Origin: Euprymna scolopes | Lineage: Eukaryota | Length of the DNA stretch: 64,000 nt | Assembly (NCBI GenBank): GCA_053919585.1 | Contig: CM132783.1 | Strand: one strand, 5' to 3' | Shown: piece by piece, positions 1-53,075 of the stretch | Numbering within the stretch: the first letter of the stretch is position 1 | Layout: each line of letters starts with the position of its first letter | Made by a program: the position numbers and the translations under genes | Notes under the pieces: model-generated | Databases searched by the model: none | What the model was told of the DNA's origin: nothing | The model's input: only the letters and a program-made list of their open reading frames with translations

Positions 1-1639
1 CCTTGATAAGTAGTGATTCCTATGTAAAAAAAAAACCCTTCGTGTAAATCCAGTCTTTTAGCTGATTGAATAATGAGTTATCCTCTTGTAATAGAAATCC
101 TCCGAGATGCACCTTCCCCACTTACATGTTTGTCTTTACATACTGGAAGAGCACCCACATTTCTGCTAACTGAATCCTCTGTTTTCCTTTTTTCACCCCA
201 ATTAGATTCTACTTTCATTTATTGATAGATTTATTTTATTTCGTTCTGAATAAACGGAAATAAAATGTTGTTTGTTATTTAAAAGGATTGGGAGGCAGCC
301 ATAACAGGCGAACTGTAGCAATTGTACTATTATAAAAATGATGGCAACTAAGACGACATCGGTTGTGTCAACGTAAGTTTAACCTTAATAACAACAGGAA
401 AGAGGATGAATAGAGTAAGGGAGAAACAGATAGGGAAAGAAAAACGGATATGAAAACGTAGCATACGAGACAAATATAAAACTATGAAAAATTAGCTACG
501 CAGCTACGCAGCAATTCCTACATCTCCATTAAATAATACTTATGTTTGTTAAAGAAAAATAAAACAAATCATCACTCGAATTAGATGGTATTAAAGAAAA
601 CAAATATAATAGTTTCTGTGAAATAAACAATCCGTTCAATTTTACGAGAGTGATGAAGCTTATATTTTTGTATTGTCAAGAAATAGCGTTTTAATTTACT
701 TTGTAATGCCGTTAAAATGCATTGTTAGTCGGTGTTTTAATCGGTGACGGGCATTGTGTTATTTATCTTTATAATGCTTAATAAATTTGTTCAGATCATG
801 AAAATAACTTAATAATGGTTAATTCCAAAAAATAAATCATTTAATTCTAAATAACTGAATAAATGAAATCATGAAAAAAACAGCGAATGCAAAAGAAACA
901 AATATTCAATGAAATATGTTTGCATATTGATTTCGCGAATAACATCATTGTATTCGACCTAAATAGAAATTCCAGTTTATTTTATTTCGAGAACATAAAA
1001 GATGTGCTAACCTCCGTAATTGTATTATATAAATGCATAAAAAACAATTTTTCAAACTAATAAAATTCGAAATAATTTATAAAACTGATCTAAAACAAAG
1101 TAATTATCCGGATATTGCATTTTTATTCGCGTAAGAACATTTTGATAAAGTCAATGTTTAAATCGTTTGGATAGCAAAATTTTCCACGTCTAATTTATAA
1201 AAATTTCTATGTTTGTCCGTGTATTTTCATTTTAGACGCAATGCCGCAAAGCAATGTGAAGTGGATCAAATGATAGCATCTTTATGAACCAGTATTCAGC
1301 CGGTAAAAATAGCTGCTAAGGGGCAGAATTGAAAAAAACATTGGTAACTTGGAAGGCGAAAGTCAACAGAGTGTCTTGTCCGCATGAGCAAATATATGTT
1401 TATTGGTTAGAGTCGGTTGATATTGAACTATTTCTCATTCGTCTGACAATAACTGAAACAGTCACAACTTAGGGTAGAGCGTTAAATGCTTTGGTTTTAA
1501 TTCTAGCTGATGACATCCAAGTGATATATTTTTTGAACTTTTAAAATCGCTACTAAAAATTGGGCATAATATAATAATCATTAAAGAATTCGCTACATAA
1601 TAATAAAATACGAACTTTGATAAATTAACATATCATATT

Positions 1640-1681
1640 TAAGAGCATTTTACGACGGGGTAATGCCGGGCGCCCTGCTAG
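1640..1681 (+). mobile_element. Helitron-like 3' terminus (GC hairpin + CTAG)
   Basis: agcattttacgacggggtaatgccgggcgccctgCTAG|t; related ends at 7110-7149 and 18071-18101. Confidence 0.45.
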
Positions 1682-1955
1682 TAGTATTGTAAAAGACAAA
1701 AAATGTACGCAACTATTCATAACCGGAAATATATTTTTTTCTCTGCAAAAATTTACGTTTAGTGGCAATAATAATATTCCTTATTTATTATAATTATTGT
1801 TTTTTATAATACTCTGCCAATATAGAATATAGTCGATTAAAACAGAATTCGGCCCAAGAAAAAAATCCGTTGTTTATTTTGTTTCAAGAACATGTCTTAT
1901 CACACTTGATACATTTCTAGCTACATATTTCGACCTACCTATGTTATAAAAAAAC

Positions 1956-1961
<6 letters not shown>

Positions 1962-2022
<61 letters not shown>
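1962..2022. repeat. (TA)n microsatellite (others at ~17642, 18102, 20328, 27661, 40511, 48633, 49154, 54970, 63927)
   Basis: Directly visible. Confidence 0.97.
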
Positions 2023-2024
<2 letters not shown>

Positions 2025-2029
<5 letters not shown>

Positions 2030-3100
2030 CGTCGAAAGTACTCAGAAAAATTAATATAATTTATATGTTTCTGGAGACAGTTTGCTTAATTGTTTATTAG
2101 TAGTTATAATTATACATGTTGACAAATAAAAAGACAAATGTAAAAAATGTACTTGTTTGGGATCGAAAATAGGAGCCCATTTTAATTAACTTTAATTATA
2201 AAAGTACGATACGAATGATGAAGCCCAACGGATTGCAACTCAGATATGGTATTATATAAAAAGAAGAAAAAAGATAGAATCAGACTAGTAAATGCTAAAG
2301 TTTCCTGAATAATAATAAAGAAGAACTAAGAAAACACATAATATATAATAAAGAGAGACCGAATATTAAAGTAAGACCAAAACGTATAATACCAAGACCA
2401 GTGAAAGGAAAACAAAAAGAACAGACATGAACAATATAAGGAATCTACTTCATTAACTATATTTTACGTTGAACTATAACATTTCTATAAAAAATATGTG
2501 AACATGTAAAAATAAAAAAAATAGTCGATAGTAAGAATCACAATAAAACATGTCAGAGGAAACTACGTAAATAGACAAGAGCCAGAGAAAATTGTAAAAT
2601 AATATCATAAATATTGAAAAACCGACAATCCAGTTATGCCAGAAGGGATATAAAAATTAGGAATGACTGTCTTGGGATCAGTTGAGACATGAAATCATTT
2701 TAAAATTAGTGCTTGAAAAAAATAGAGAAAGCTATTTGAAACTGATTTGTATAGTAAAAACTTAATAAAACGAATAAATGCGTGGTTACTCTTCATAATA
2801 AAATATATAAATTGGACAGACGAATAACCCTGGAATCAGAATCAAATAAAAAGTACACCCATTCCAAAATATAACACCCAGAATCCGACCAATGATATTG
2901 AGCGAATAAGAGGAGAGAGTACTGGGAAATAGTTCCGATAGTTCCGATAGTACGATAAAAATTAAAAAATAGGCGCATGTAAACACGTGGACATGACTTG
3001 GAGGATATGACATAGAGATTATAAATCATGAAAAAAGCAACGCTATTCTTATTGTTGCAAATAATAGAAAAATTCACTCAGGTAAACAACAACACTATTT
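2025..3100 (+). mobile_element. Highly decayed Penelope-like element fragment
   Basis: Broken frame around 2790-2900 gives IGQTNNPGIRIK*..H.FQNITPRIRPMILSE, resembling a GIY-YIG endonuclease. Begins at a (TA)n tract. Boundaries approximate. Confidence 0.35.
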
Positions 3101-3479
3101 AAATCAGACGAAATTGTTAGAAAAGTCCTAGATTGCTACAACCAACTATAATATTCCGGTGACAGCAATAAATCACAAGTACGTTTCATAAAATAGCGCT
3201 GCATTAAGTAAACTAAAAATACACAATTAACATAAGACGTAAACAAGGTAAAAGCAGTTTATATAAAACAATTAAAATAATTATTAAACAGAATTTGCTA
3301 AATGAAGACAGTTGCATCAACATCGGTATGAAACACACCGCCGTTATCAGTGAGGTAAACGAATTTTATGAGAAAGCAAAAAGATTTACAACGATGATAA
3401 AATGACGCTCAGAGTAGTTGATATCGGGGGAAATTTGGTATAAATCGTATTCACAAAATACTTCCTATTTTGTCAGTTA

Positions 3480-4031
3480 TTAAAAACTCTTCTTAAAAAA
3501 AGAATGGGAGAGATTGGGATTAGAAGGATGGCTGGGAAGATACAACAGATAACAATAATAAAAATTGCAGAAATATTAACAAAATCATGGAATGTGAACA
3601 TTAATATCACACTTGAACTACAAACAGCTGCAAGTGTTAAACACAAAACAACATCACAGGTACTACTATGCGGCTCTGCGTTCTGGCTACCCTTTTTTGT
3701 ATGTGCGTGTGTGTGTGTGTGTGCTCCACATGAAATAAGTAAGAAGGGTCAAAGAGGATGGAAAGATCGAAGAGAGAAAGCCCTCCGCTGGATGAGTGCG
3801 AAGACTGGGACTTTGGGAGGGCTTATTACCAACTAAATCCCAGCAAATACCAATGGTCGCTGACAACGGGAAATCAATGGTAAGCGACTGTTGCGATGAC
3901 GCAAATTCTTTTTGGAAATGTTATCGAAAGAAGTGGAGAGTACTGGAAATCATGGAAGACTTGTTGCCACGAAGATCCCAGAGAACAGCACAAGTCGTTC
4001 TTAAAGAGAAATCATTGATGATGGCCTGCGT
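3480..4031 (+). mobile_element. RLE-type (R4/Dong-like) non-LTR 3' fragments
   Basis: MGEIGIRRMAGKIQQITIIKIAEILTK resembles the C-terminal tail of restriction-like-endonuclease retrotransposons. Confidence 0.35.
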
Positions 4032-4271
4032 NNNNNNNNNNNNNNNNNNNNNNNNNNNNNNNNNNNNNNNNNNNNNNNNNNNNNNNNNNNNNNNNNNNNN
4101 NNNNNNNNNNNNNNNNNNNNNNNNNNNNNNNNNNNNNNNNNNNNNNNNNNNNNNNNNNNNNNNNNNNNNNNNNNNNNNNNNNNNNNNNNNNNNNNNNNNN
4201 ATTGCCAGCGAGAAATCATAATAATAATATGACGGATATAATGAAAAGATGAGGAATTTAGGAATAGTGAA

Positions 4272-4430
4272 TTATTTTATTTTATTTTTTATTTATTTAT
4301 TTTTTTACACAGTGATCACCACTTATCAAGGCCCGGAAGCCACTCAGGGATAAGGGTTATTGCAAGTACATTACGTTAGTGTGGAGATTTGATGAAGTGT
4401 TTACTTAAGGGGGCGGTTCATTAGGAATTT
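4272..4430 (-). mobile_element. CR1-group LINE 3' end with A-rich tail
   Basis: Near-identical reverse complement of 9028-9160. Confidence 0.8.
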
Positions 4431-4694
4431 CTTTTAAAAATAGAAACAAGTTGTAATATAAGAAGCAACTACAAAAAATTGTCTATTCATTGTGACAGAA
4501 CGAGTGAAATTATTCGAAAGGTTTTTAAGCCTTATCGTATAAAGAGGGTTCGTTTTTTGTCATAAAGTATTATCACTTATGCAGAAATAATGATGGGTTT
4601 ATTTTATCATTGCTTTCTTAAGATTGTGTGCTTTTTGAGAATACGCATACCGATTATATATAAAGGAAATATATCTCAACAACTTGGAACTTAC

Positions 4695-4725
4695 CAGCCA
4701 AAATTGTGATGATTTTTGTTGCCAT
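4695..4725 (-). CDS. suckerin: Suckerin paralog (gene 0), first coding exon: signal-peptide start MATKIITILA(G); downstream exons not found in window
   Basis: Reverse complement reads tttcacag|cttattaatctacagaagtc-ATG GCA ACA AAA ATC ATC ACA ATT TTG GCT G|gtaagt. This is the same 31-nt phase-1 coding segment as gene 1 (MAAKIITLLA) and gene 2 (MSAKVITLLA). Exon spans ~4695-4745. Confidence 0.85.
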
Positions 4726-5611
4726 GACTTCTGTAGATTAATAAGCTGTGAAATAAACAAATAAAACAATGCTTTTAGTATTTTAGCTTTTAGTATCTAT
4801 TTCGAAAAATGTAAAACGTGACTTCTGTTAAATCCTTCAACGGATGGAAATATTATACAGTTTCACACATGAACATACAATTACAATTAGAGACAAGAAT
4901 ATTATACGTTACAACATAACCGATTATCTTCCCCACACGGTTTAATTCTACATTAAATATAGACTCGAAAAATATGAATAAAACTCTTAACTAAAACATT
5001 CGTCAAAATTTACTTGAAAACTGTTATACGCTGGACAGTTCAATGAGTGATTTTGTTAACTGATTAAACATTATGCTTATATAGGATTGACAATCGATCC
5101 GAATAAAAAAAATGATTTAAATCATGCCGTGCGACTGATTATGATATTAAAATATATATTTAAGGTTTTGCTATTAATTTGAAAACTCACATTAGGAGCC
5201 ATTGCATGTTTATATCTGCCTTTATTGCATTTTTCTAACTTAGATAACAGTTCGGATTAGCACCGACTTCGCTTCGATAAATCCGATGAAAAATTACTAA
5301 AGGAGATGTTCCGAACGAAAGCTATTTAAAAAAGGTGAATTTAATTAAACATTCGACATTTATAATAGAATTATGTCGGTTATTAAGAAATATCCAACTC
5401 GCTAGTTATTATAGATTAAATATTGTTTTTTAATTTAAATCTTGATTATAACTTGATGTAATCTCTGATAAAGATATATTTCTTTTAATAGAAATGTTTT
5501 TTCTACTAAAGTGTACATGCTTCAGGGCAGTTTATATATTAAATTGATCTAAACAATTTAATGAAAATTTAAAACAAAGTAGAATTGAAGAAAAGGAATA
5601 TGAAGACTTAC

Positions 5612-5653
5612 CAGAAATGGATAGTCACACGAAAATTGAGCAAAGCGGAGACT
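5612..5653 (-). other. Gene 0 non-coding exon 1 (TSS approximate)
   Basis: Minus strand aagtctccgctttgctcaattttcgtgtgactatccatttctg|gtaagt aligns with gene 2 exon 1 (agtctctgctttgctcaacctttgagtgactatccatttccg|gtgagt). Confidence 0.75.
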
Positions 5654-5850
5654 TCGAAAGGAAGGTTCGCGAGCTGGCTTTTATAGCAAACAGTTAGACA
5701 CATTCTGGAAGAACTGCTTTGAAAATAAATCTTTTACGATTGAGCCTGAAAACCAAAATAACTACAGGTCGTGGGAACAACAGGGTGTACCTTTATTGAA
5801 TCGTTTATTATTAATTGTTATCTTAATTGACCAAAAACTCGTAGATTTTA
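5654..5850 (-). promoter_or_regulatory. Gene 0 core/proximal promoter, TATAAAA at 5685-5679
   Basis: Minus strand ...cacgacctgtagttatt...tattttcaaagcagttcttccagaa...tgtttgcTATAAAAgccagctcgc, homologous to the promoters at ~14130-14301 and ~57485-57674. Confidence 0.8.
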
Positions 5851-6598
5851 AATAAATTCAATTGTTTCTTTTTAAGGTATTCTTTCATTAACATTTAAAT
5901 GTATGAAGGAAAATTATAAAAAGAGAGACGATCGGTCAAAATTAGTGCACGCGTAACAATATAGCTTGTATACGCTCGATGACGTAACAACATCTAAAAA
6001 ATTAATAATTGTTTCTATCTGTTAAGAAAAATTAAATATAGAACGTGTTGACCAATTCACCGTACATACGCACTCGGCAACTACGGAATCCACAACACGG
6101 CAATGCATGTTATAGCAATGTTATTGCGTACTATGTTTGTATTGCCTTCTCTATTGAAAAATTGCTTAAACTTCCACGATAGAAATAAATATAATGATAT
6201 TATTGTGAATCTGTTACAGCATTCTCCCCGGTGGTTTGAGCCAGCTTCAAAAGAAGGTTTTAGCGTTGTTTCGCAAGGCGTTCATCCATATCCATGGATG
6301 ATTTTTTTCAACGCATAATTGTCACGCTTTTATAATCAAATGCAACTTCTAACTTAGTTGAGACAAGTCCACAGCCGACCCGGAAATGGATCCGAATTTA
6401 TTGCCTCGTTTATCTTTTTCTGATTTAATACTTTTACATAGAATCTGCCAGATAAGACAAGCTTATACCTACTGAAGCTCAAAAGAATTTTAAGGAGATA
6501 CTCATTCGGGCACATTAACTCCTTCCCTCATAGCTATTGAGCGATGGGATTATTTTCAAACCGGTTCGTATGTGGAAGAGTACATCTCGCTCTTTTTA

Positions 6599-7149
6599 TC
6601 TATACATTAATGGGATAGCGTGTGTGTTATTTTTGTATGTCACGCTTACATCAGAGTGACTGTCGTTTGATTGTTATTGACTTCCATTTCTTATAATAAA
6701 TAATTTTACGAAGAATTCTCCATAAGTTTTGGTTTCGGTTTCGATTATAGCTGATGGCACTCCAGTAATCTATTTATTGTAAATAATTTATCAAGAATTC
6801 TTCATAATTTTNNNNNNNNNNNNNNNNNNNNNNNNNNNNNNNNNNNNNNNNNNNNNNNNNNNNNNNNNNNNNNNNNNNNNNNNNNNNNNNNNNNNNNNNN
6901 NNNNNNNNNNNNNNNNNNNNNNNNNNNNNNNNNNNNNNNNNNNNNNNNNNNNNNNNNNNNNNNNNNNNGTTTGCCTTCGATTCAAGCTGATGCACCGAAG
7001 TCATATGAATATTTTTTTTTTTTTTTGAAATCGCAACTTTATGATATATAAGAACCTTAGCTCTGTTATAATATATACGAAATGTGCAAGAATGAAAATA
7101 TCGTTTAAAGCATTCTTTACGACCGGGCTACGCCGGGCGTCTCTGCTAG
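6599..7149 (+). mobile_element. Non-autonomous Helitron-like element (contains N gap)
   Basis: Starts a|TCtatac, carries internal ~85-bp repeats, ends gaccgggctacgccgggcgtctctgCTAG. Confidence 0.45.
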
Positions 7150-8864: not shown

Positions 8865-9160
8865 CCAAATGGAGGGATATCTCCCCTACTCTTTATCTGT
8901 GCCTAAATCAAAACCTGGATTCCATGAACAAAGCTTCTTTCTTAGAACTGCACGCCTGTGGAACTCTGTTTCGTCTGCCTGCTTCCCACCTGACTACAAC
9001 TTGGATGTGTTCAAGTCCAACGTTAACAAATTCCTAATGAACCGCCCCCTTAAGTAAATACTTCATCAAATCTCCACACTAACGTAATGCACTTCCAATA
9101 ACCCTTATGCCTGAGTGGCTTCCGGGCCTTGATAAGTGGTGACCACTGTGTAAAAAAAAA
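8865..9160 (+). mobile_element. CR1-group LINE 3' end (ORF2 C-terminus, 3'UTR, polyA)
   Basis: SFFLRTARLWNSVSSACFPPDYNLDVFKSNVNKFL, then 3'UTR and A-tail. Confidence 0.8.
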
Positions 9161-25073: not shown

Positions 25074-26001
25074 AATATTTTCCATAACAATTAGTTCTTT
25101 ATACATATACATGCAAATATTAATACAAGTAGTCGTTCGCTGACAGTTTCATTTAGAGTTTTATTTGCAAAGGATTAACCCAGAATATTTTTTTAAATTA
25201 TTTTCTATCAGCTAATTATTTCGGTATTTAGTTCGCATATTAAATAAACTTAAATGAATGACGACATAAGGTTTTCTAGATTATTGGCGATGTCTCCCAA
25301 GGGACGGCTTCCATGAGGAGACTGATTTGAAAACCATTGTTTCGTCATGTTTGAAAAAAGTGACGTCATTCTGAATCTGTTTTGTCTGTATCGTTTGTCT
25401 TAAAATTTGCATGTCAGCCATCTTTGATTCAACTCTTAGAATTATTGTTTTGCATATCGTGATTATTATCATGCATTCAGTGTAACTCATGTCAAAATTC
25501 ATAAAAGGTTACTTAACTACTATTAGGATAGGATTCTTAATACATAATATATAGACATGCTAAGTTGTTTATATATCAATTATATGTGAGTTTTAATATG
25601 TGTCAATGCAAAGAATAACTTTTAAAAAAATATCTTGAAAGCGTTGCCTTTTACGAAGATTGAATATTGAATAATACCAAATGTAAAGAAAAGAAACACT
25701 CCTATTAATGCTAATAACACTATTACTATTAACAACAATAAAATTTATTCGGATTGTATATAACTTGCAAATAACGCACATACAGATATTACTGAATGAT
25801 GGCCAAAAATATTCATTGCATCAATTTAATATATTTGCATATTATGAATTTAATATATTTATATATTAACAATTTACTATATTTAATATATTTAATTTTA
25901 TGTTTTGAAAATCATAGACTGTTAATCTTCTTATGTATGTGTGTGTGGTGCTTGCCGTAATAAATTATTCCGTGAATGTTTATATTTCACTTATTTTTCA
26001 G

Positions 26002-26130
26002 ACTTTTGTCTAATTTTTAGAACTTCGACCTCTTTAAAATGAAGAAGAAAACGAACGATGAAGACACACATCTCGATTTTTTTGTAATTGCTAATATTGT
26101 AAAATAAAGTGTGGCTCTATATATACTTGT
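26002..26130 (+). other. Candidate terminal 3'UTR exon of gene 1 with polyA signal AATAAA (26103-26108)
   Basis: The donor g|gtaagt at 24962 needs a downstream exon. The best nearby acceptor is ttatttttcag (ends 26001), followed by AATAAA. Inference only. Confidence 0.45.
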
Positions 26131-27657
26131 CTTTGTTATTTTTCTTTTTGAAATATTTATTTTTTTCCATGACATTGTTACAAGCAAAAAATAAATGACT
26201 GTTTTTAACGAAAGGCCAACGAGCATATTTAGTTTATATGTTTAACGTTATATTATCTCTTTGGTCGAAATCGAATTTGTGTTCAAAATTATCCAATGTT
26301 ACTGACTAATTTACATTATTTATTATGTCATTCATAGTTCAGCCAAACTTTGTGTCTGTAATTTTCTCAAATTTGCGCATCAGAAGACCTGATCAGATTT
26401 AAATTTTCTATGATAATATTTATAAGGTCAATAAGACATCAAGCAAAAATAAAACCACAAATTATCTGTTGGCTAAATGGCTTATTTAGTTATTTCTATC
26501 CGGGTAAATACTTAACTCTGTATAATTGTAGTTATAAATATTTACAAATATTACGTCAGCATTTAGAGTTTAAACTCATACATTTGTTTCAGTTTTGTGT
26601 ATTATTTATAACTAGCATGACCCCTAAAAATTTCACAGAGTGAGAAATATATTGAATCAATAAATACATGTTTCTAAATAATGCAAAACATTATTTTTAT
26701 ATGCAGAAAATCTAATAAAACGTAGCAAATATGAGTTTATTAAAAATGTCCATGAAAATAGTGTTTATTGTATTTGACACATAGAACTGCCCCAAATGAT
26801 ATAAATTAATAAATACTAATAAATACCCCGATTATAATATTGTACTGTGTAGTTCAATGCAAATAATACAATCATATTGTAAGAGCCAATCTTTAATTCA
26901 CACCGTCAATCTAGTACCTCTTGGCAGACAATGTCTTCGTGTTTCTTTTTCTTGAAGGGATGGGCGTTTCTTTATAATTTTTTCTTATATACGTAAGATT
27001 TCGCTGAATTCTTTTGTCGATAAAGAACTGCTGCAAGTCTAAATTACTAGGAATTAATTTCTCACACAGTTACAACAATGATCATATATTATTATAATGA
27101 CATTCGAAAACAAAGCTACATCAAAGAGAGGTTAATCTAACATTTTTGTCCGCACTTGCTAGATTGTAATTTTTTTAAGACAACTTTCATGATTTCGGTC
27201 TTTATGTTAGCAATTTGAAATTCAAAAATTGTGTTCTGTATTTTTAAAAGTATAACGTATAGATTAACTGAGGAAGGACAGGCAGAATTGTTTATAAATT
27301 AATGATCATCAACATAAAAGAGNNNNNNNNNNNNNNNNNNNNNNNNNNNNNNNNNNNNNNNNNNNNNNNNNNNNNNNNNNNNNNNNNNNNNNNNNNNNNN
27401 NNNNNNNNNNNNNNNNNNNNNNNNNNNNNNNNNNNNNNNNNNNNNNNNNNNNNNNNNNNNNNNNNNNNNNNNNNNNNNATTCAAGCATGCGTAAACAAAA
27501 GCTTGTTCACTCTAGAAGTCTGCTCAAGATAAAAAGTAAGAATTTTGTTCTGAAATATGTGACGTAAGCCCTAAGAAGCTGACATTAAAGTTAATGCCAA
27601 TCATTAAATGTTTCGTTGAAAAATTCTAAAGTATAAAAACAAAACAAGTACAAATGA

Positions 27658-32609: not shown

Positions 32610-35210
32610 ATACGAATGTAAAATTCATGCTGTTCTCAAAATTGCTGGAGTGTCAGTAGACAAATAATTTGCAATCAGGTTGGAATGGTGTGATCAGTAA
32701 ATATACCCATCTCAGAGACTATTTTATCAGGGAGGTCATTTATGAATATTAGGAATAATGAAGGTCTAAGGATAGACCTCTGAGGTACACCCGTATTTAT
32801 ATCATATTGTTTAAATGTACGACCGTTGAGGAAACCTGGATTCTTCTATTATTTAAGAACGATTTAGTAAAATTAAGTATTCGTCCAGTGATACCGTGTG
32901 ATCTGATTTTCCTGAGAAATACCCGGTCAAAAGACTTAGATATATCTACCCTGTCCTACTTTGTCTAGTGTATGGTATATACTTTCAGAGGTTACACTTA
33001 GGATATCTGCTGTAGAACGGGCTTGCCTGAGTCCATATTGTTGGTCGATCATAAGTTAAGCATCTTTAAGGTGATGGACTAGACCTTGATTATTTATGGA
33101 CCGAAATATTTTGCCGAAAAGCAGGAAGAGGCTGATGGAGCGATAATTTAATTTAATTTAATTTTCGCCAGAATTCTTGTAAACTGGTAGCACAGAAGCA
33201 GTTTTCCAGCACTCATGAAAGCAGATTCGTTTAGGCACATGTTGTAAAGCCTCAGCATAGCATGTTTTTAATAGCACAGCTGATATGAAATCGAGTCCAT
33301 ATGCTTTTGAAGTGTCAAGGGTTTTTATGATATAATGCAGCCGAGAAGGAGTAATTTTCATATCCAGTGTGGCGTCAGTCCGCAAAGAAGATTCAGGGCG
33401 GAAGTGGTTTGCTGGGTTCAATGTGGAGTTTGAGGCAAACCGACTGCTAAGCATGTTAGTCTTCTCGTTGCCGTTCAAACAATCTCATGATTGTTTGATA
33501 GCGGGGGAATTGTTGATTGCCCGTTATTTACTACATTGTTGTAGATATCTCAGAAATCACGGGTTCCTAATTTCTGTGCTTTGGTTTCAGTATTTTCTCT
33601 CTTAGCTGTCGCTATTTCTTTCTTATAATTACTTCTAACTTCTATATACTTTTGTCTGTTTGTACTGGACTTATGTCGGTAAAATCTACGGTATGCATGC
33701 TGCCTTTGTGCAATGGTAGTTGCACAAGTAGAAATAAACCATTGAGGAGCGAGGTGTTTGCAATAAAATTTCTGTGTGGGAACATGTGCTTCAGTTGCCG
33801 TTTTGAATCATTCAGTTGTCTTATTTGCGCACTGTTCAGCAGGAAGAGAACAGATATTTCCCCATGGGGCATCTCTGATGAGACCCCTGCTGACTTCCCA
33901 GTCAGCCTTCTTATAATACCTTGTCGTTTTGAGTAGTCAGTCTCCAGTTTTTGGTCAAGAATTAATATTGGTGTAATAATTCACAGCGTGAACAGCTTTC
34001 CGGGATATGTCATGGGCATTCGTTACACGGTCATCGGGAACTGTGATACAAATAGATTTAGAAGTCGTGTTGATCTTGCTGATCTTGGAAGCGTGTCGGA
34101 AACGGACCCGTTTGTGATAGGGAATGAGATATAGAGAAGCTATGTGTATGCTACTAGCTGCGTCTGTATAAGTAGAGAATCCAAGCCAATTACTGTGGTA
34201 GACATTGAAGTCACCAAATACATGCACTTGTGCGTTAGTATCCAGGGAGAGTGCTATATCTATGCTTTCAGAGACTTGATTGATTAGCGTACAGTCCTGG
34301 ATCGAGAAGGTAGTGAAAGTATAAGTAGCTAATGTTATGGTGCATGGTAAGTTTAAAGCACATAAAGGCCTGATCGTCTGATTCGAGTTTTGTTTCTCTA
34401 GTCAAGGGACGGGCGTTTTCAATATAGACTCCAAGCCCGTGCATATGTCTGTCAGAGTCCTTACGGCAAAGTGGAAGATAACCAGACCTGTTAAAGTAGT
34501 TTGAGGGACTAGAGAAGTTTCACTTAGCACTAAGATATCCGGGATGTTTGCTAGGAGAAATGATTCAATATCATCTAAGTTAGTTCTAAGCTCGTGGATA
34601 CTCGTGAATGCGAGCCCCAAGGGAGGAGGCACATTCGTTTTGTTTGGGTTTAAGCCTGGTTTAAGCGTAATATTGATCTGGACAAAGTGGTTGTGCAGAA
34701 TACCAAACATACAACACAAGTAGACCGTCAGTTGGCTCCTTATCTACAGGATCGTGGCCTCGAGAAAGCCCACCGACATGGCACTAAAACCATCCAAATA
34801 TTATGCAACTGATGATGGAGCAGCCGCTCTAAGTGCTACCAAGGAATTAGGGCTTATCTACTGTCAGCCGGAAACAGCAGCTGGAACCTGTCAATCCGAT
34901 ACCTATTAGACAAAAACCAACTCAATCCAATTGCATTGGCGTATATGGCACTCAGGCACCCCCAAAGTGTCCAGTTTGGGCGGGAGCGGGGAACGGTGTT
35001 CCATGCCTTAGTCAGGAAACAAGGTCGAAAAGTGAGTATTTCTGCCGAGTCGCTGTGCTTGCACCTCTGCGTCTGGCAAATAGGCAAAAAAGAGTATAAA
35101 AGCCGGACGATAGACAGAGCGTAGTTACTATTTAAGCAGTTTAGGTTTGCAAACCGGTAATTTGTTCGAGTCACCAGCTTTGGAAGGTCGTTGTTCAGGA
35201 CTAACAAGGC
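32610..35210 (-). mobile_element. CR1-group LINE, 5' two-thirds (5'UTR, AP endonuclease, RT N-half), decayed
   Basis: APE motifs PDILVLSET and HVFGDFNVYHSNWL; LDTSKAYGLD, WKTASVLPVYKN and VPQ..ILRP. Clear nucleotide similarity to 51560-52180. Confidence 0.85.
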
Positions 35211-41880: not shown

Positions 41881-42370
41881 AAATCCGTACACCAGCGATC
41901 TGCCACCAATTATCACCAAATTGAAGCTAAAAACATACCCATTTAATATAGAAAAATATGTATAAAGCAATTATTTACTAAATTTACATTTGATGACGTG
42001 GATATTTTTACGTGTGCCATTAAATTTAAATATATAGAAGTAAAATAAAAATTGTCAATGTTTTATTTTAATAGATTTATATTGTTTTTTTAGTTTTGTT
42101 TAGTAAGATACGAATTGTCATTAGATGAGAATAGCATTAGAATAATATTATCTACCTAAAAATTATAGATTTAATCTGTGGAAACGGATTGTAAAATGTG
42201 AGAAAAATTAAGATTCTACAGTAGCGAACGCGTAAGATAACTATAGATATATGTAATATGATCACATGGCTATAGATGAAATTTGAATAAGGGTGATGCA
42301 CTTACATACACACAGATACAACGTGGAAAAATCAGAGTTAAAGTTGAACAATAAAATTTAAGTTACATGT

Positions 42371-42713
42371 TGTGATGGACATAGAGAGAACCTACCTCAG
42401 AAACGGGCGAGAATCTGTCTCGCCAGCAGGCTGAAAGACAGAAAAAGAAAAAGAGAGGCCAAGATGACGGCTGTTGTCTTTTAAAGCTTCCGGTCACGCG
42501 TTGATCTCGAGAAGTTTCGTGTGGTATATGCAAATTGGATGTGCCCGAAACATTATAGAAGTGTTTAAGACATGCGAATAGAGAACGTTGACGTGAATCT
42601 CGTGTTGTGAACAACGAACTCTACTCGACTCAACTTGTGACTAGGGAATCTCTGCTTGACATTTTAATACAAACCGTTTTGTTGCTTTGCATTAGACAAA
42701 GACTTCTGATACA
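42371..42713 (+). repeat. 5' LTR (343 bp)
   Basis: tgtgatggac...gacttctgataca; direct repeat of 46289-46653. Confidence 0.93.
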
Positions 42714-42737
42714 AGCTATTTCGGCTGTATTCTAATC

Positions 42738-45700
42738 ATGGCTCTAAGACAGTTTGACCTCCGACTCATCGCCGAGTTTAGTGGCGCAGCAACTGACGTT
42801 TCAATAGTAGAATGGCTAGAGGATGTAGAATTTACGTGTGAGCTGTGCGAGGTAACCTAGGTGGAGCGAGTACTGCCGCGTCGGCTGAAGGGTGCGGCTC
42901 GTGAGAAGTATCGGCAACTCTCGGAGGACCAACGGAGTGGCCTCGAGGAAATCAAGCGTGCCCTTGTAAAGGCTTACGGGACGGATTCGTTTAAACAGTT
43001 CACCGCCCGCCGCCTTCGGCCAGCGGAACCGTGGATGAGTTTTTGACGGATTTGCAGCGGCTAGCACGTCTGGTAGATGAAATGCCACCAGAGTGTTGAA
43101 TAAAGGGAGCCTTCGTGAATGGATTGTCATGCCATGCAAAGGGACGTTCTCAAGCCTCAACCCGAATGGACAGGCTGTCATTGAAAGAGCTGTTTCAGAG
43201 GGTTCGTGCCGTTAACTGCTTCAGATGCGGGGGCCCAAACCATTGGGCCCGTGATTGCCTTTCGTCGCGGTCAACAACCCAGAATCCTAGCGGACCGCGG
43301 TGTCACAAATGCAAAAACTGGGGAGGAAGTTACAGCGCCAGTCTTCTCCCCAGATCGTCATTAAACAAGGCGCTGTCTGCGGTGAGCGTACGTGTTAACG
43401 ACGTGAGTGCCACGCGCTTGTGGACACGGGTTACATCCAGACACTTGTGCGCAAAAAACGTTGCGACACTTGGAAAACGACAAGAACTCTTTTGCGTACA
43501 GTAGTCGAGAGCTGGTTGTCCTCTTGCGGAGAAGGTATCATCCACATAAGCATCGGTAGCGGCCCTGAAGTAGCCGTGCAAGCTCTGATTATGGACCGGG
43601 AGCTACTTGGGTACGATTTACTCTTAGGAATGGACGCAATTGTGCAGCTGGGTGGAGTCGTAGTTGATGGAGCCGGAAACGTGACGTTCTCCCAACGCGA
43701 AGAGTGCGTTTGCGCGACACTCACCCTAGATAAGCCTGATTGTCGTGCGGAGTGCGACCAGTGCACGAAGTCCTGGACTGTGGCTTCGAAGTGGTCGGAC
43801 GAGCAACCGCCAGAGAATTTTTTCAATACAGTGCCAGAGTACAAGATTTACCCCGGAGCTTGTGTAGGGAACTACAGACCTTGATCGACAGTGGATGGCT
43901 CGTTCCTTATATTGAGAAGGCATTGAGGCCTCCAAAGTGTTTAATCCCACTAGTGGCGGTCTTCTAGCAAACAAACAAAAAGTGACGCCGGTGCTCGAGT
44001 ATTGGGAGTTAAACAAATACGTGGACCCTTTTACGGCCCGCGCAGACCTTTACGCTGATAAATTACAGGAATAGCGGCAAGCAGGGTCTAATGTGTGCGT
44101 ACTTGATCTTCGGAAGGCGTACCTTCAAGTGCGTGTACACCAGTTACTATGGCCTTATCAGACAGTTCTGGTTAAAGAGAAGAGATACCGCTTAACCCGT
44201 ATAGGGTTCGGACCCAACGTGGTGCCATCAATTATAAAAACGATTTTTAACACCATTCTGGCTCAAGAGGAGCGCATAAGGCAGGCAGCATCTGTATATA
44301 TTGATGATGTATACGTGAATGAAGGGGTTGCATCCGCGACGCGTGTAGACGAGCATCTCCGCAACTTTAGACTTCTCAGTAAGGAGTCAGAGATAATACA
44401 GGATGGCGCACGGGTGCTCGGTTTACAGGCCCGGAGAGAAGACGGCGTCCTACATTGGAAACGGGGAAATAAAGTCCCAGACATGCCCCACGATGTCACG
44501 CGAAGAAACGTATTTTCTTGGTGCGGAAAATTGGTTGGACACCTACCTGTGGGCGGCTGGCTTTGTGTTGCGGTGGCGTTCATAAAGAGGAGAGCGTCTG
44601 AGGTAACTACTGGATGAGATGATGTGGTACACGACGCCCCTCTCAACACAATTCTGGAGGAAGTCCTCTCCAGTGTGCGAAAGGAGGACCCTGCACGGGA
44701 CAGATGGTGCGTCGACAACCGAGACCTGAGTTTCGGGTTGATGCGAGCCCTCTTGCTACGGGCGTATCAATAGTCCTTGATGAGGCCGTGGTGAACAATG
44801 CCTGCTGGTTACGCCCAGAACGGGACTCCCAGGATATAAACCTGGCAAAGCTTAATGCCGTCATCAAAGGGATAAACTTGGTGATCGTCTGGAAGTCGAC
44901 TACCCTGCGGTTATTTACATATTTTGCCTGCATCCACAAGTGGATTTCGGACACCCTTACTGGGAGGGCCAGAGTACAAACTAAAGCTACGAGCGAGATG
45001 CTCATCCAATGGCGGCGGCTTGATACCATCATGAGGATCAAAAAAGAATATGCGCTGTCAAAGGAAATCTCCCTGGTCAGGTCCAGCCTGAACAAGGCCG
45101 ATTGTTTAAGAAGAGTTCTCCGCAGATAGATTGAGGCCACAAGAAGAACCATCGAACCCATACAACCGGCCTGCGCCGCAGCCGCGTGTTCTGCTCAGTT
45201 TGATTGAATCAATGAAGCCCTCCACCAAATTGGACATCCAGGGGTCAAGCGGACCTTGTATTTTGCTAAGGTGGATGACCCTGAAGTACGAAAAGCAGAC
45301 CTTAAAAGAGCGGTTGAGAGTTGTGTGTGCCAATCTATCGAACCGGCACCCGTTCGCTGGGAAAAAGGAAACTAGACGTAAAGAGCCACTGGAGCCGGCT
45401 GGCGATAGATGTTACTCACCACGACGGCGACAATTACATAACACTCATTGACTGCGGCCCATCTAGGTTTGCGATATGACGGCCGCTCCGCCGGCAAGTT
45501 ACGGCAGCACTCATCCGTCAGGCAAACTGCATCTTCTTCGAACATGCCCTCCCAATGGATATACTAACTGACAACTGCACCGCTTTCACCAGTGGACAAT
45601 TCAGAAAGTTTGCCGATGGATGGTGAGTAAATCTGCGGTTTCGATGTGCCTACGTATCGAGCGGGAATGGGATTATTGAGCGGAACCACAGAACTGTCAA

Positions 45701-46050
45701 AACTATTGCCGCGAGAACGGCCTGGGCGGTTTCTGAAGCAGTTTATTTATACAATATTACCCCAAAGGATGCTGTATCACCCTCTACAGCGCCGATCGAC
45801 ACATTGTACAGGTATAACGCTAGGGTGAAGAACATAGAAACGAACCCAGTACCTGAGATGAAAGTAACTGGAGGGAGGCTGGAAAAAGATGTTGTCTGGA
45901 TCAAAAACCCGCGCGGTAAATGTACGACTCAGTATGGACTTGGACACATCACTGAAGTGATCAGCAAGCAAGCAGTGTGTGTCGACGGTGTGCCCCGTCA
46001 CATTAACACTTACGACCGACAACACACTCGCGGCTACCCGTGAACAAAGG
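42738..46050 (+). pseudogene. gag-pol of the Gypsy element, with multiple stops and frameshifts
   Basis: Gag FDLRLIAEFSG..VEWLE; CCHC knuckle CFRCGGPNHWARDC; protease ALVDTG; RT LDLRKAYLQ...YIDD; RNase H VDAS; integrase HQIGHPG..C.VC, D(VTH)-D(NCTAF)-E(RNHRT). Confidence 0.92.
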
Positions 46051-46288
46051 GAGCGAGTCTGACTCCGAGTCAGGGACCAGTGAGACATCGCTCTAGTTCA
46101 CAGCAGCTCCCCCAGAAGGTGACTCTGATATCAGTAGCCTCTCAGCGGAAGCGGTATTCTTCAACCCCCACTTCGCGGACGATAGCTTAAGCGATGAAGA
46201 GGCATGTATCGTTCCCCTTCGGAGAAGCACCCGGCGACGGCGATCACTACCCCATTGCCATTTCTGTGATCACGAGATCAGGAGGGAA

Positions 46289-46653
46289 TGTGATAGACAA
46301 AGAGAGGACCTACCTCAGAAACGGGCAAAAATCTGTCTCGCCAGAAGGCTGAAAGGTAGAAAAAGAAAAAAAGAGGCCAAGATGGCGGCTGTTGTCTTTT
46401 AAAGCCTCCGGTCACGCGTAGATCTTGATGCAGTCTCATGTGGTATATGCAAATTGGGTGTGCCTGAAACATTATAAAAGGCGAGTCGCTAGGAAGAGTG
46501 GGAGAAGCGTTTAAGACATACGGATAGAGAACGTCGACGTGTATCTCGTGTTGTGAACAACGAACTCTGCTCGACTTGTGACTAGCGAACCTCTGCTTGA
46601 CGTTTTAACCAAAAAGTGTTGTTACTTTGCGTTAGGCAAAGACTTCTGATACA
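46289..46653 (+). repeat. 3' LTR (365 bp)
   Basis: tgtgatagac...gacttctgataca; carries ~26 bp absent from the 5' LTR. Confidence 0.93.
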
Positions 46654-49470: not shown

Positions 49471-50351
49471 TAACAGGTTTCAGGCTATTGTTTGCTGCGA
49501 ATCTGTTACTTCTTACAAGAGCGGTTTTAATTCTAAGTCGAAGAGATCTTTCGCGAAAATTTATAAGACACGGATATCCCATCAGACCAGCTGATACAAG
49601 TAATCACAGTACAAAAATAAATAAAATGTGTATATGAAATATATAAATACACATGTATTTGCAATTGTGTCAATGAAATTATTCTTCATCTGCTTCAGTT
49701 TGTGTCTTTCCGTTAGGATAATGCAGAACGCAACAATTAGCTTTTGAGCTTATAGTGATATCAATAAAGAAAAAAATGACGATATAAAATTATATATTAA
49801 TATATTAAGATTTATTCAATAATGGTATATATCAATTATAGGTGTAGAGTAAGTGCGAGCCTTTTATATCACTGCATTTCGAAGCTTAAATCGTCTCATC
49901 AGGAGAGAAGATGCCTGGAAACATAATATAGAGGCGACGCCTAGCAATGGTTACATTAGGAGCGAAGCAAAATACTGAGACTGTTTGGGGGAACTAAATT
50001 GATCTATGTGATGTAGAAGGTGTATAGGATTTTATTATATATTGCAGATAAATACATTGTATATCTGCGATAATGGGTTTAATATACACAGGCGGCAAAA
50101 AGAAAGTCCGGACTTGTATTTTTTTCAAAAACTGCAAATTTAAGCTAAATTTAATGTAGCTGTTTAAACTAACTATACCTCATTTGATTGATCTTTGATT
50201 TTTCTATAATTTTATTTGTTCATATTGGACTTTTAATTGAAATATTCTAGTGTTCAATTTAAAAAAATAACTTCAAATTGAGGAGACCAACAAAAAGTCT
50301 GCACAATTATATTAATGTAACACTAATGAAACAGGAACACAATGAACTAGT

Positions 50352-51305
50352 TTATATTTATTAGCATCGCCTTTCTGTAATTTGACAGTCTGCAATCTTT
50401 TGGGAATTCCTTGAATCAGACTGCAGCAATACTTCGGGGAAAGGGCATCCCACTTTTCTTTAATTTTTGTCCAAATTTGAAATTTTATTATTACGTAGCT
50501 GGTGCTTGATGTAATGCTATACGTTTTCGATAGGATTGGGGTCTGGAGATTGTGCACGCCAATCCAAACACGAAACCTCTTGACATTGCTAGCTGTGTGA
50601 ATGGGAGCATTATGCTGCATGAAGATGGGATTATCATCCAAATTCCGACCAAAGTAGGGTAGAAAATGCCTAGTCAATATATTAATGTACTTTGTCGAAT
50701 TAATTTGACCTTGCCAGCGAACTATAGGCCCTGGGCCATTGGTACTAATAACGCTCCACACCAAAACTGAAACTCCACCACCTTGCAGCCTTGAAACTGT
50801 GCACCTAGGATTAAATTATTCGTCTTTCCTCCGATGGACATACTGTCTACCATCACTGCCTAGCTTATTGAACTTGCTTTCATCGCTAAAAAGCACTTTT
50901 GACGAATATGCAGAGTCATGATCTTCATTGCTTTCTCTTCTTTACAGAAATCATTGGCTTGCGTCTTGCAACATATCCTCGCAAATTAAATTCCTTTAAT
51001 CTGTTCTTGACAGCAGAAAGAGAGCACTTTTTAACAAGTGTGCACTGTTGTTGGATTTCGGGAGACGTTTCAAATCTGTTTCTTAGGCTGCGAATCTTGA
51101 TAGCATTGTCTTCCCTGTTAGAAGTAATACTAGTACGACCAGATTAAGGGGCATCACGAACTTTGCCGGTGTTTTGGTGCGTTTGCATAGTCTTTCGTAC
51201 CATTTTTTCATCACCTTTCAATCTACGGTCGATTTCTCGATTGGATAAACTAGAAAGGTGGAGATTAATGAACTCCTGACGATCAGTAAGAGAAAGTCGT
51301 ATCAT
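50352..51305 (-). pseudogene. Tc1 transposase (DD34E type), disrupted
   Basis: MIRLSLTDRQEF.., SGR, ARRKP, VLFSDESKF, GGG.SVLVW, FMQHNAPIH (catalytic D replaced by H), SPDPNPIENV; several stops. Confidence 0.88.
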
Positions 51306-51559
51306 ATGAACTAAATGTTACGTTGTAACATCTGTAACAGCAACAATTGCAATTAGAAATGCTTTGTTGCCTATTGGTGGATATTTTAACTGATTTAGAT
51401 GTGATAATTTAAGCTGGTTTTAAACGAATTTGTTATTACGGACTTTCTTTTAGCCTCCTCAATTTGAAGTTATTTTTTTAATTGACGTGAACACTAGAAT
51501 ATTTAAATTAAAAGTAAAATATAAACAAGTAAAATTTTGGAGGAATAAAAGGCGAATCA

Positions 51560-53075
51560 GTTCTCACGAAACTCTACAACAAATGCCTTAATGAAGCTTG
51601 CTTTCCAGGCTGTTGGAAAACTGCTTCTGTTGTACCAGTATTCAAGAATTCTTGCGATAGAACTGACCCATTAAATTATCGCCCTATTAGCCTCCTCAAA
51701 CTTTTTGCCAAAATATTTGAGACCTTAATTAACCATGCTCTAGTCCAGCACTTTACAGATGCTAAACCTCTGACCGACAAATAATATGGATTTAGACAAG
51801 CCCGTTCCACAGCAGACATCCTCACTGTAATCTCTGAACGCATATACGATTCACTGGACAAAGCGGGAGAGGGCAGAGCGGTAGCTCTAAATATATCTAA
51901 GGCTTTTGACAGGGTATGGCATGAGGGTCTCCTCAGGAAGATTAGATCATACGGTATCACTGGTTGAATACTTAACATAATTAAATCCTTCTTAAATAAG
52001 AGAAAACTCCAGGTTGTCCTCAACGGTCGTACATCTAAACAATATGATATAAATGCGGGAGTGCCCCAGGGATCTATCCTTGGACCTCTACTGTTCCTGA
52101 TATTCATAAATGACCTCCCCGGCAAAATTGCCTCTGAGATAGGTATATATGCTGATGACACCACACTCTATAGCAGGCACGACAGGAAAACAAATGAACA
52201 TATATATAAAGTACTGGCAGATACACTAGCGAATGACCTCCAATCAGTAGTGGAATGGGGACAAAAATGGATGGTCACGTTCAATGCCGCCAAGACTAAA
52301 CTGGTTTCATTCAATAATTACAAGAAACCTTCTCTACTACCTATAGCAATGGCCAACGACTCTTTATCTGAGAGTACGTCTTTCGAGCTCCTTGGCCTAA
52401 CGTTCACAGGAAACATGAGGTGGAACAATTACATCGAAGGCATTGCCAGAGCCGCTGCAAGGAAGGTGGGCTCTCTCTACCGTGCTAGACAACTACTAAC
52501 ACCAGAAAGTATCCTGTACCTCTATAAGGCAACCATTCGCTCATGTATGGAGTATTGCTGTCATATTTGGGCTGGTGCATCGGTTAGTAGTCTATCGCTC
52601 CTTGACAGGGTTCAAAAGAGAGTCGCAAATCTGATAGGCCCTTAACTGGCTACTAAGCTTCAGCCTCTGTCCCATCGACGAAACGTTGCATCCCTCTGCC
52701 TGTTCTACAAGTATTTTAATGGTGAATGCTCTGATGAACTGCAAGCACTTGTGCCCCCACGACGTGAACACCCTCGACAGACCCGACAAGCTGCAAAATC
52801 CCACCCCCACACTGTAGAGATCCCTAGATGTAAAAGATCTTTCTACTCCGGTAGTATCTTCCCCAGAACCGCTAGACTTTGGAATTCCATTCCAGGTCAC
52901 TGCTTCTCCAACTGTACTGACAAAAGTTCAAGTGCAACGTGAACCAACATCTTTCTGCCCAAATCTCTACATAGTACCCCAGTAGTTGTTTCCCCTGATA
53001 GTATCCTCCTACACCAAAGTGGCAATGTGCCTTGTTTCGGGTGAAAATGTAATAAAAAAAATAAAAAAATAAAAA
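51560..53075 (+). mobile_element. 5'-truncated CR1-group (CR1/L2/Crack-like) LINE with RT domain and A-rich tail
   Basis: NYRPISLL, YGFR, ISKAFDRVWH, VPQGSILGPLLFLIFINDL, YADD, MEYCCHIW, LSHRRNVASL, RTARLWN. In-frame stops present. Tail aataaaaaaaataaaaaaataaaaaa. Confidence 0.93.

What the first reader, a model, noticed from the sequence alone, without database searches (positions are those of the whole stretch)
4695..5850. Hidden third suckerin on the minus strand, head-to-head with gene 1
Seen: an inverted copy of the promoter, exon 1, the start of intron 1 and the signal-peptide exon (MATKIITILAG|gtaagt), with all splice sites intact. Its TATA box is ~8.6 kb from the gene 1 TATA box, in divergent orientation. 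I found no matching 39-nt exon in 1-4694. Inference: the gene continues left of the window or into the 4032-4200 gap, so the cluster grew by inverted as well as tandem duplication. Alternatively this is an orphan 5' end.
Basis: partly seen in the sequence, partly recalled or inferred. Interest (0 to 1): 0.72.

Follow-up and report, generated by a model that had tools for sequence, protein, structure and literature searches.

The report
Complete minus-strand suckerin gene
The inverted promoter and signal-peptide exon are the start of a complete, intact gene for a squid/cuttlefish sucker-tooth protein (suckerin) whose remaining exons lie just left of the window; it is one more ordinary member of a gene cluster of a kind already described in other squids.

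Summary
The minus strand at 4695-5871 holds a diverged inverted copy (70-81% identity) of the suckerin promoter, non-coding exon 1, the start of intron 1 and the signal-peptide exon. All splice sites are canonical, and the TATA box lies 8,591 nt from gene 1's.

It is not an orphan. The window is C1:54932001-54996000. Left of it, on the same strand, I found the 39-nt exon 3 (C1:54930582-54930544) and an open Gly/Tyr/His repeat exon 4 (C1:54928386-54927968). Phases match, giving a 162-aa product that is 93% identical to gene 1's. Its N-terminus agrees across both splice junctions with suckerin-1 (S. lessoniana) and suckerin-7 (D. gigas).

Exon 3 is not in the 4032-4200 gap.

The cluster holds at least eight genes in about 300 kb, three of them on the minus strand, so "third" is an undercount. 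Whether the inversion arose by inverted duplication or by later inversion cannot be told.

Two extras:
- A roughly 350-nt tract of exon 4 is 98% identical to gene 1 while the flanks are at most 80% identical. This indicates gene conversion.
- All five nearby genes carry GTAAG exactly 39 nt after the stop, plus a conserved downstream AATAAA block. This suggests a fifth, non-coding exon.

The finding is ordinary: a new member of a known kind.

The parts
5686..5871 (-). Conserved upstream promoter region. Blocks GTCAATTAAG, CCCACGACCTGTAGTTATT and TTTTCAAAGCAGTTCTTCCAGAA are shared with the paralogues.
   Evidence: blastn; seven-gene alignment
5678..5685 (-). TATA box TATAAAAG. The motif TATAAAAGCCA is invariant in seven paralogues.
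5612..5655 (-). Exon 1, non-coding 5' UTR. The 5' end is only estimated, about 30 nt after the TATA box. The donor is CTG|GTAAGT. It contains no upstream ATG.
   Evidence: The start site is an inference.
4746..5611 (-). Intron 1 (866 nt, GT...AG). Its first ~250 nt can still be aligned with gene 2's intron 1.
4695..4745 (-). Exon 2 (51 nt). It holds 20 nt of UTR and the ATG at 4725-4723 in the context GTCATGG. It encodes MATKIITILA plus the first base of codon 11 (phase 1). The donor is CTG|GTAAGT.
1..4694 (-). The window's part of intron 2. The whole intron runs C1:54936694-54930583 and is 6,112 nt, counting the 169-N gap at 4032-4200. It holds a young SINE-like repeat at 4300-4433 and an older interspersed repeat at about 1190-1700.

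The rest of the gene lies left of the window and cannot be given in window coordinates:
- Exon 3: C1:54930582-54930544 = L004:8582-8544. It is 39 nt, with acceptor TCTTTCAG| and donor CAG|GTAAGC, and encodes (V)IAFSNYASAILP.
- Exon 4: C1:54928386-54927930 = L004:6386-5930. It has acceptor TTGGCAG|, 138 full codons of suckerin modules, a TGA ending at C1:54927968, then 38 nt and a conserved GTAAGT.
- Putative non-coding exon 5: C1:54923916 to about 54923800 = L004:1916 to about 1800. It has acceptor TATTTTTCAG| and AATAAA at C1:54923821-54923816. It is inferred from conservation only.

Best explanation
Window 4695-5871 (minus strand) is the promoter, 5'-UTR exon and first coding exon of a complete suckerin gene. 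Suckerins are the secreted structural proteins of squid and cuttlefish sucker ring teeth.

The gene runs leftwards out of the window for about 13.9 kb. Its parts are exon 1 (UTR), exon 2 (ATG plus 10 codons), exon 3 (39 nt, the rest of the signal peptide), exon 4 (the whole mature protein) and probably a fifth, non-coding exon carrying the poly(A) signal.

The product has 162 residues. It starts with a typical secretion signal, MATKIITILAVIAFSNYASA, followed by ILPG. The rest alternates between Ala/Thr/Ser/Val/His blocks (AATSYSHTTHHAP, AAASTVSTVHHP) and Gly/Tyr/Leu/Phe blocks.

By inference from the family, sucker epithelium would secrete it, and it would assemble with its paralogues into the beta-sheet-reinforced tooth material.

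It sits head-to-head with gene 1. It is an old paralogue, since its promoter and introns are only 70-80% identical to any other copy. Its repeat-coding tract, however, was recently homogenised with gene 1 by gene conversion.

What is shown: the anatomy, the open frame, the homology, the conserved promoter and the conversion tract. What is inferred: transcription, the exact start site, the fifth exon, the tissue and the material role.
For: - Location: the window is C1:54932001-54996000. A six-frame search of the genome with gene 2's repeat exon finds an open 154-aa frame at C1:54927971-54928390 on the minus strand, 87% identical and without stops.
- Missing exons: blastn finds the exon-3 homologue at C1:54930530-54930635 (-) and the exon-4 homologue at C1:54927846-54928470 (-), 85.8% identical to gene 1 over 647 nt.
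- Gene model: every donor and acceptor is canonical, phases are 1/1, and the joined frame is 489 nt = 162 codons plus a stop.
- Family: exon 4 matches Suckerin-1 of Sepioteuthis lessoniana (E 1.8e-12) and Suckerin-7 of Dosidicus gigas (E 5.9e-11). Their N-termini, MAAKLLTLLAVIALSNYAYALLPGLMGG and MAAIFTLLAVLAISNYASAILP, run colinear with my model across the exon 2/3 and 3/4 junctions.
- Composition of the mature part: Gly 20%, Tyr 16%, Ala 15.5%, His 10%. This fits the M1/M2 description in PMC11931252.
- Selection: Ka/Ks against gene 1 is 0.24 overall and 0.14 in exons 2-3.
- Promoter: the conserved blocks and the invariant TATAAAAGCCA are kept, as in six paralogues.
- Translation start: the 5' UTR has no upstream ATG, and the ATG has a purine at -3 and G at +4.
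- Gene conversion: exon-4 nt 60-406 differ from gene 1 at 7 of 347 sites, against 11 of 59 just upstream (p 4e-6). Codons with only synonymous changes number 3 of 115 in the tract against 12 of 43 upstream (p 2e-6).
Against: - The exon 2-to-3 splice and transcription itself are therefore unobserved.
- No near-identical protein from an annotation or a transcriptome turned up in the protein database.
- Gene conversion from gene 1 could keep exon 4 open without selection acting on this copy.
- The C-terminus lacks 9 nt relative to gene 1 (HHPVGFY against HHPVGAFGYY). This is in frame, and the length there varies among paralogues.
- Intron 2 contains a 169-N assembly gap.
Confidence: 0.85

Rival explanations
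1. It is an intact-looking but silent or dying copy. The 5' end is no longer used, and the open exon 4 merely reflects repeated gene conversion from the active neighbour, gene 1.
For: A conversion tract covers most of exon 4, so its open frame is weak evidence for selection on this copy. No transcript evidence could be obtained. The gene has a small in-frame C-terminal deletion.
Against: The parts outside the tract have diverged 20-30% from all paralogues. Even so, they keep the invariant TATA motif and conserved promoter blocks, four or five intact splice-site pairs, the ATG, the correct phases and a signal peptide with mostly synonymous change (Ka/Ks 0.14). Decay at neutral rates over that much divergence would be expected to break at least one of these.
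Confidence: 0.1
2. It is an orphan 5' end, or truncated pseudogene, left by a partial inverted duplication.
For: Within the window alone there is no exon 3 or exon 4 on the minus strand.
Against: Exons 3 and 4, and a putative exon 5, lie on the same strand at spacings typical of the paralogues, in frame and open. No other promoter or exon-2 copy lies between them and the window.
Confidence: 0.02
3. It is an assembly artefact: a mis-joined or falsely duplicated inverted copy of gene 1 or gene 2, created near the N gaps.
For: N gaps lie at 4032-4200 and 6812-6968, on either side of the finding. The near-identity of exon 4 to gene 1 could in principle come from collapsed reads or over-polishing.
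Against: The promoter, exons 1-3, the introns and the 3' flank differ by 20-50% from every other copy. This is a distinct locus, not a duplicate of an assembled one. L004 has no N between exons 3, 4 and 5.
Confidence: 0.03

Closest known systems
Suckerin family of decapodiform cephalopods, for example Suckerin-1 of Sepioteuthis lessoniana (A0A081DU96) and Suckerin-7 of Dosidicus gigas (A0A075LWS6)
   Same: It has the same kind of N-terminal signal peptide (MAxK..T.LAVIA.SNYA.A.LP). It has the same alternation of Ala/Thr/Ser/Val/His blocks ending in HH(A)P with Gly/Tyr/Leu blocks, and the same Gly/Tyr/Ala/His-rich composition. Sequence matches are significant, E 1.8e-12 and 5.9e-11 (PMC11931252).
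   Different: Identity to the named proteins is only about 53% over the alignable part, so this is a species-specific paralogue. It is short: 162 aa with about five M1 blocks. No expression or proteomic evidence was obtained here.
Suckerin gene clusters reported in Doryteuthis pealeii (13 genes in two clusters on chromosome 2) and Euprymna scolopes (16 genes) (PMC9068888)
   Same: Many paralogues are packed on one chromosome stretch: at least 8 genes in about 300 kb of C1.
   Different: The passages I read do not give exon structure, gene orientations, gene conversion or a 3'-UTR intron. Those details are worked out here from sequence only.
Gene 1 of this window (165 aa, exons at about 14.3, 15.15, 23.54 and 24.5 kb)
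   Same: The two proteins are 93% identical and share the exon plan and the two-repeat-unit length. A roughly 350-nt core of exon 4 is 98% identical.
   Different: The genes have opposite orientation. The promoter is only 72-76% identical and the introns mostly cannot be aligned. Near the C-terminus there is a 9-nt length difference, and there are 11 amino-acid differences in all.

Membership tests
Suckerin (sucker ring teeth protein) | Significant sequence similarity to named suckerins | tested here: met
   Suckerin-1 of S. lessoniana, E 1.8e-12, 53% identity; Suckerin-7 of D. gigas, E 5.9e-11. BLASTP 3e-10.
Suckerin (sucker ring teeth protein) | Modular alternation of M1 blocks (Ala/Val/Thr/Ser/His, about 11 residues, e.g. 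AATAVSHTTHHA or PAAASVSTVHHP) with M2 blocks (Gly/Leu/Tyr-rich) | tested here: met
   The exon-4 translation shows AATTYSHTTHHAP, AAASTVSTVHHP, AATSYSHTTHHAP, AATSVSAVHHP and AAASYSHTLHHP, separated by blocks of the YAYGGLYGGYGLGAYGY type. The family definition is taken from PMC11931252. The M2 blocks here have about 16-19 residues, a little shorter than the 20-30 quoted.
Suckerin (sucker ring teeth protein) | High Gly, Tyr and His content | tested here: met
   Mature part: Gly 20.4%, Tyr 16.2%, Ala 15.5%, His 9.9%.
Suckerin (sucker ring teeth protein) | N-terminal secretion signal | tested here: met
   Residues 5-14 have a mean Kyte-Doolittle hydropathy of 3.2, and A-S-A sits at positions -3 to -1 before ILPG. 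The N-terminus is colinear with those of the two named suckerins. No dedicated signal-peptide predictor was available.
Suckerin (sucker ring teeth protein) | Expression in sucker or tentacle tissue and presence in the ring teeth | not testable with these tools
Suckerin gene cluster (as in D. pealeii and E. scolopes) | Several paralogues closely linked on one chromosome | tested here: met
   All 20 matches to the gene-2 repeat exon fall in C1:54.76-55.05 Mb. Promoter and exon homologues were mapped for seven genes.

The most novel reading that the evidence does not exclude
The suckerin cluster evolves in concert. Short gene-conversion tracts are exchanged between neighbouring paralogues even when they are inverted (gene 3 and gene 1, whose exon 4s lie about 28 kb apart). 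This homogenises the repeat-coding core while promoters, signal-peptide exons and introns diverge freely.

All genes also share an undescribed 3'-UTR intron whose donor is fixed exactly 39 nt after the stop codon. That places the junction inside the roughly 50-55-nt distance within which, in mammals, an exon junction does not trigger nonsense-mediated decay.
Probability: 0.55. Interest if true: 0.35.

Novelty: new member of a known kind. Interest (0 to 1): 0.25.

Why it matters
It corrects the gene count and gene model for this locus. The 5' end in the window belongs to a whole gene that crosses the window border, and the cluster has at least eight members in mixed orientation.

For people who use suckerins as protein materials, it adds a short (162-aa) natural variant.

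For genome biology, it gives a clean small example of gene conversion between inverted paralogues. It also points to a probable conserved 3'-UTR intron.

None of this changes what is known about the family. Suckerin clusters are already described in other decapodiform genomes.

Tried and rejected
- Joined protein: I searched the spliced model exon by exon, by reference. I did not send the joined 162-aa protein to any search tool, which ruled out look-up of encoding contigs, the listing of cluster members and a full-length homology search. The joined frame was computed only inside scripts from referenced files, for the frame check and Ka/Ks.
- Pfam: no family matches any suckerin exon, as expected for low-complexity lineage-specific proteins.
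- Exon 3 inside the window or the gap: there is no match on the minus strand in 1-4694. The real exon lies 1.4 kb left of the window, so the gap hypothesis is not needed.
- Extended palindrome between gene 3 and gene 1: rejected. Homology stops about 190 nt upstream of each TATA box. The 96% inverted pair 4300-4433 / 9025-9158 is a dispersed young repeat with hundreds of copies.
- Earlier findings of the scan: look-ups by place and by sequence were blank. Look-ups by words gave only titles of notes on this same window.
- Direction of the inversion (inverted duplication or later inversion): this cannot be decided without an outgroup genome. G000 has no relatives in the genome collection.
Exons 3-5 are therefore described in the text of the intron-2 part.

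Full report
**1. The observation**

On the minus strand the region reads, 5' to 3':
- Conserved upstream blocks.
- TATAAAAG at window 5685-5678.
- A short non-coding exon ending CTG|GTAAGT, last exon base 5612.
- An 866-nt intron ending TTTCACAG|.
- A 51-nt exon (4745-4695) with ATG at 4725 that encodes MATKIITILA plus one base, then |GTAAGT.

Similarity to the other two genes is far beyond chance:
- 5358-5861 matches gene 2's 5' region inverted, at 73.5% over 513 nt, E 4e-77.
- 5470-5871 matches gene 1's 5' region at 69.7%, E 1e-40.
- The exon-2 region matches both genes at 71-74%.
- The promoter/exon-1 core is 81% identical to gene 2, and the repeat finder reports a 181-nt arm at 82%.

The two TATA boxes are 8,591 nt apart and divergent. 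No exon-3 match lies on the minus strand in 1-4694.

**2. Where the rest of the gene is**

The window is C1:54932001-54996000 of a 5.9-Gb, 925-contig genome. A six-frame search of that genome with gene 2's repeat exon returned 20 matches. All fall on C1 between 54.76 and 55.05 Mb. One is an open frame on the minus strand at C1:54927971-54928390, 87% identical and 3.6-4.0 kb left of the window.

I fetched 60 kb to the left. blastn then placed an exon-3 homologue at C1:54930530-54930635 (-) and an exon-4 homologue at C1:54927846-54928470 (-), 85.8% identical to gene 1 over 647 nt.

Reading the sequence:
- Exon 3 is exactly 39 nt (C1:54930582-54930544), with acceptor TCTTTCAG| and donor CAG|GTAAGC.
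- Exon 4 begins after TTGGCAG| at C1:54928386 and runs open to a TGA ending at C1:54927968.
- Both junctions are phase 1.
- The joined frame, computed in a script from the referenced pieces, is 489 nt = 162 codons plus a stop.
- Intron 2 is 6,112 nt, including the 169-N gap, and intron 3 is 2,157 nt. Both lie within the range seen in genes 1 and 2.

So the gene continues left of the window. Exon 3 is not hidden in the 4032-4200 gap, and the orphan reading is refuted.

**3. What it encodes**

Exon 4, searched on its own by reference, hits Suckerin-1 of Sepioteuthis lessoniana (E 1.8e-12, 53% identity) and Suckerin-7 of Dosidicus gigas (E 5.9e-11). Pfam has no model for it.

The N-termini of those proteins are MAAKLLTLLAVIALSNYAYALLPGLMGG... 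and MAAIFTLLAVLAISNYASAILP.... My model's N-terminus is MATKIITILA|VIAFSNYASAILP|GLLGAA... The match runs across both predicted splice junctions, which supports the exon 2-3-4 joins independently.

The mature part is Gly 20%, Tyr 16%, Ala 15.5% and His 10%. It alternates AATSYSHTTHHAP / AAASTVSTVHHP-type blocks with Gly/Tyr/Leu/Phe blocks. This is the M1/M2 plan that defines suckerins (PMC11931252).

As the operators asked, the joined 162-aa model was not sent to any search tool.

**4. Is it a live gene?**

These points are shown:
- All splice sites are canonical and the frame is open.
- The 5' UTR has no upstream ATG, and the start context is GTCATGG.
- The promoter keeps the invariant TATAAAAGCCA and the conserved upstream and exon-1 blocks seen in an alignment of seven paralogues.
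- Ka/Ks against gene 1 is 0.24 overall and 0.14 in the signal-peptide exons.

These parts have diverged 20-30% from every other copy and are still unbroken. That argues for selection on this copy itself.

Transcription was not shown. I put about 0.85 on an expressed, functional suckerin gene and about 0.1 on a silent copy kept tidy by conversion.

**5. Gene conversion with gene 1**

Identity between gene 3 and gene 1 along exon 4 and its flanks is sharply stepped:

| Region | Identity |
|---|---|
| More than 100 nt into intron 3 | 40-59% |
| Last 100 nt of intron 3 | 72% |
| Exon 4, nt 1-100 | 87% |
| Exon 4, nt 101-400 | 97-100% |
| 100-nt bin spanning the stop (exon-4 nt 401-500) | 71% |
| Further downstream | About 50% |

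Site by site, exon-4 nt 60-406 carry 7 substitutions in 347 nt, with a longest identical run of 159 nt. The preceding 59 nt carry 11 (Fisher p 4e-6).

Codons with only synonymous changes number 3 of 115 inside the tract and 12 of 43 upstream (p 2e-6). Selection on the protein cannot erase synonymous differences. A recent conversion tract of about 350 nt between the two head-to-head genes is the simplest reading.

Outside the tract, gene 3 is not especially close to gene 1. Promoter identities are 0.79 to gene 2, 0.77 to gene B and 0.76 to gene 1. Its introns align better with gene 2's. One caveat is that over-polishing of paralogous repeats in the assembly could mimic this pattern.

**6. The cluster**

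Mapping promoter, exon-2, exon-3 and exon-4 homologues gives this order on C1:

| Gene | Strand | Approximate span (kb) |
|---|---|---|
| C | + | 54751.7-54760.7 |
| D | - | 54814.9-54806.7 |
| A | + | 54866.0-54876.3 |
| B | + | 54900.6-54907.8 |
| Gene 3 | - | 54937.7-54927.97 (to 54923.8 with the putative exon 5) |
| Gene 1 | + | 54946.3-54956.9 |
| Gene 2 | + | 54989.6-54995.05 |
| E | - | Repeat exon at 55052.4-55053.9 |

Predicted proteins range from 162 to 497 aa. Mixed orientation is therefore the rule here. Calling this the hidden third gene is an artefact of the window.

Suckerin clusters of 13 and 16 genes are already reported for D. pealeii and E. scolopes (PMC9068888). Whether gene 3 arose by inverted duplication or was inverted later cannot be decided. 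Homology to gene 1 ends about 190 nt upstream of each TATA box. The 96% inverted pair 4300-4433 / 9025-9158 is a dispersed young repeat.

**7. A probable fifth exon**

In genes 1, 2, 3, A and B the 38 nt after the stop are conserved and are followed by GTAAG at exactly +39.

Further downstream each gene has a conserved block that opens with a pyrimidine tract and CAG and contains TGTAAAATAAAGTGTGG. Its distance from the stop is:
- 0.5 kb in gene A.
- 1.0 kb in gene 1.
- 1.5 kb in gene 2, just right of the window.
- 1.6 kb in gene B.
- 4.0 kb in gene 3.

Genes C and D give only weak matches.

I infer a 3'-UTR intron and a terminal non-coding exon. For gene 3 that exon runs from C1:54923916 to about 54923800. 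This rests on conservation only and needs cDNA.

**8. Verdict**

The thing itself is an ordinary additional member of a known gene family in a known kind of cluster. The conversion tract and the conserved 3'-UTR intron are modest extras. Interest is 0.25.

Noticed in passing
C1:54927968-54928386 (L004:5968-6386) against window 24496-24923: A gene-conversion-like tract. Exon-4 nt 60-406 of the minus-strand gene are 98% identical to gene 1, while the flanks are at most 80% identical and fall to about 50%. Synonymous differences are nearly absent inside the tract.
   Followed up: yes
window 24924-24962, 25950-26170 and 63054-63092; L004:1800-1916; L018:535-719: Genes 1, 2, 3, A and B all have GTAAG exactly 39 nt after the stop. 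Each also has a conserved downstream block with an acceptor and AATAAA. This suggests an unannotated 3'-UTR intron and a fifth, non-coding exon.
   Followed up: partly
window 4300-4433 and 9025-9158 (inverted); also 1-35: A young SINE-like interspersed repeat of about 140 nt. The first look found at least 329 candidate copies genome-wide, and the scored ones are 97-100% identical. One copy lies in intron 2 of the minus-strand gene, next to the N gap.
   Followed up: partly
window 1190-1700: An older interspersed repeat, with more than 40 scored copies at 71-78% identity on many contigs. It lies inside intron 2 of the minus-strand gene.
   Followed up: no
window 42300-46600: A retroelement fragment between genes 1 and 2, in a stretch with GC up to 50%. 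Its ORFs carry a zf-CCHC knuckle and RVT_1/DUF7047. It is flanked by direct repeats 42371-42630 and 46289-46576 at 91-92% identity, which look like LTRs. I observed it only.
   Followed up: partly
window 50300-52650: A second reverse-transcriptase fragment (RVT_1, E 3e-14) at 52061-52642 (+). Overlapping ORFs lie on the other strand, and an inverted repeat links it to 32686-32832.
   Followed up: no
C1:54750000-55054000 (loci L004-L020): The suckerin cluster has at least eight genes with orientations + - + + - + + -. Predicted products range from 162 to 497 aa. The most distant member, E at 55052.4-55053.9 kb on the minus strand, shows no recognisable promoter or exon-3 homologue at blastn sensitivity.
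   Followed up: partly
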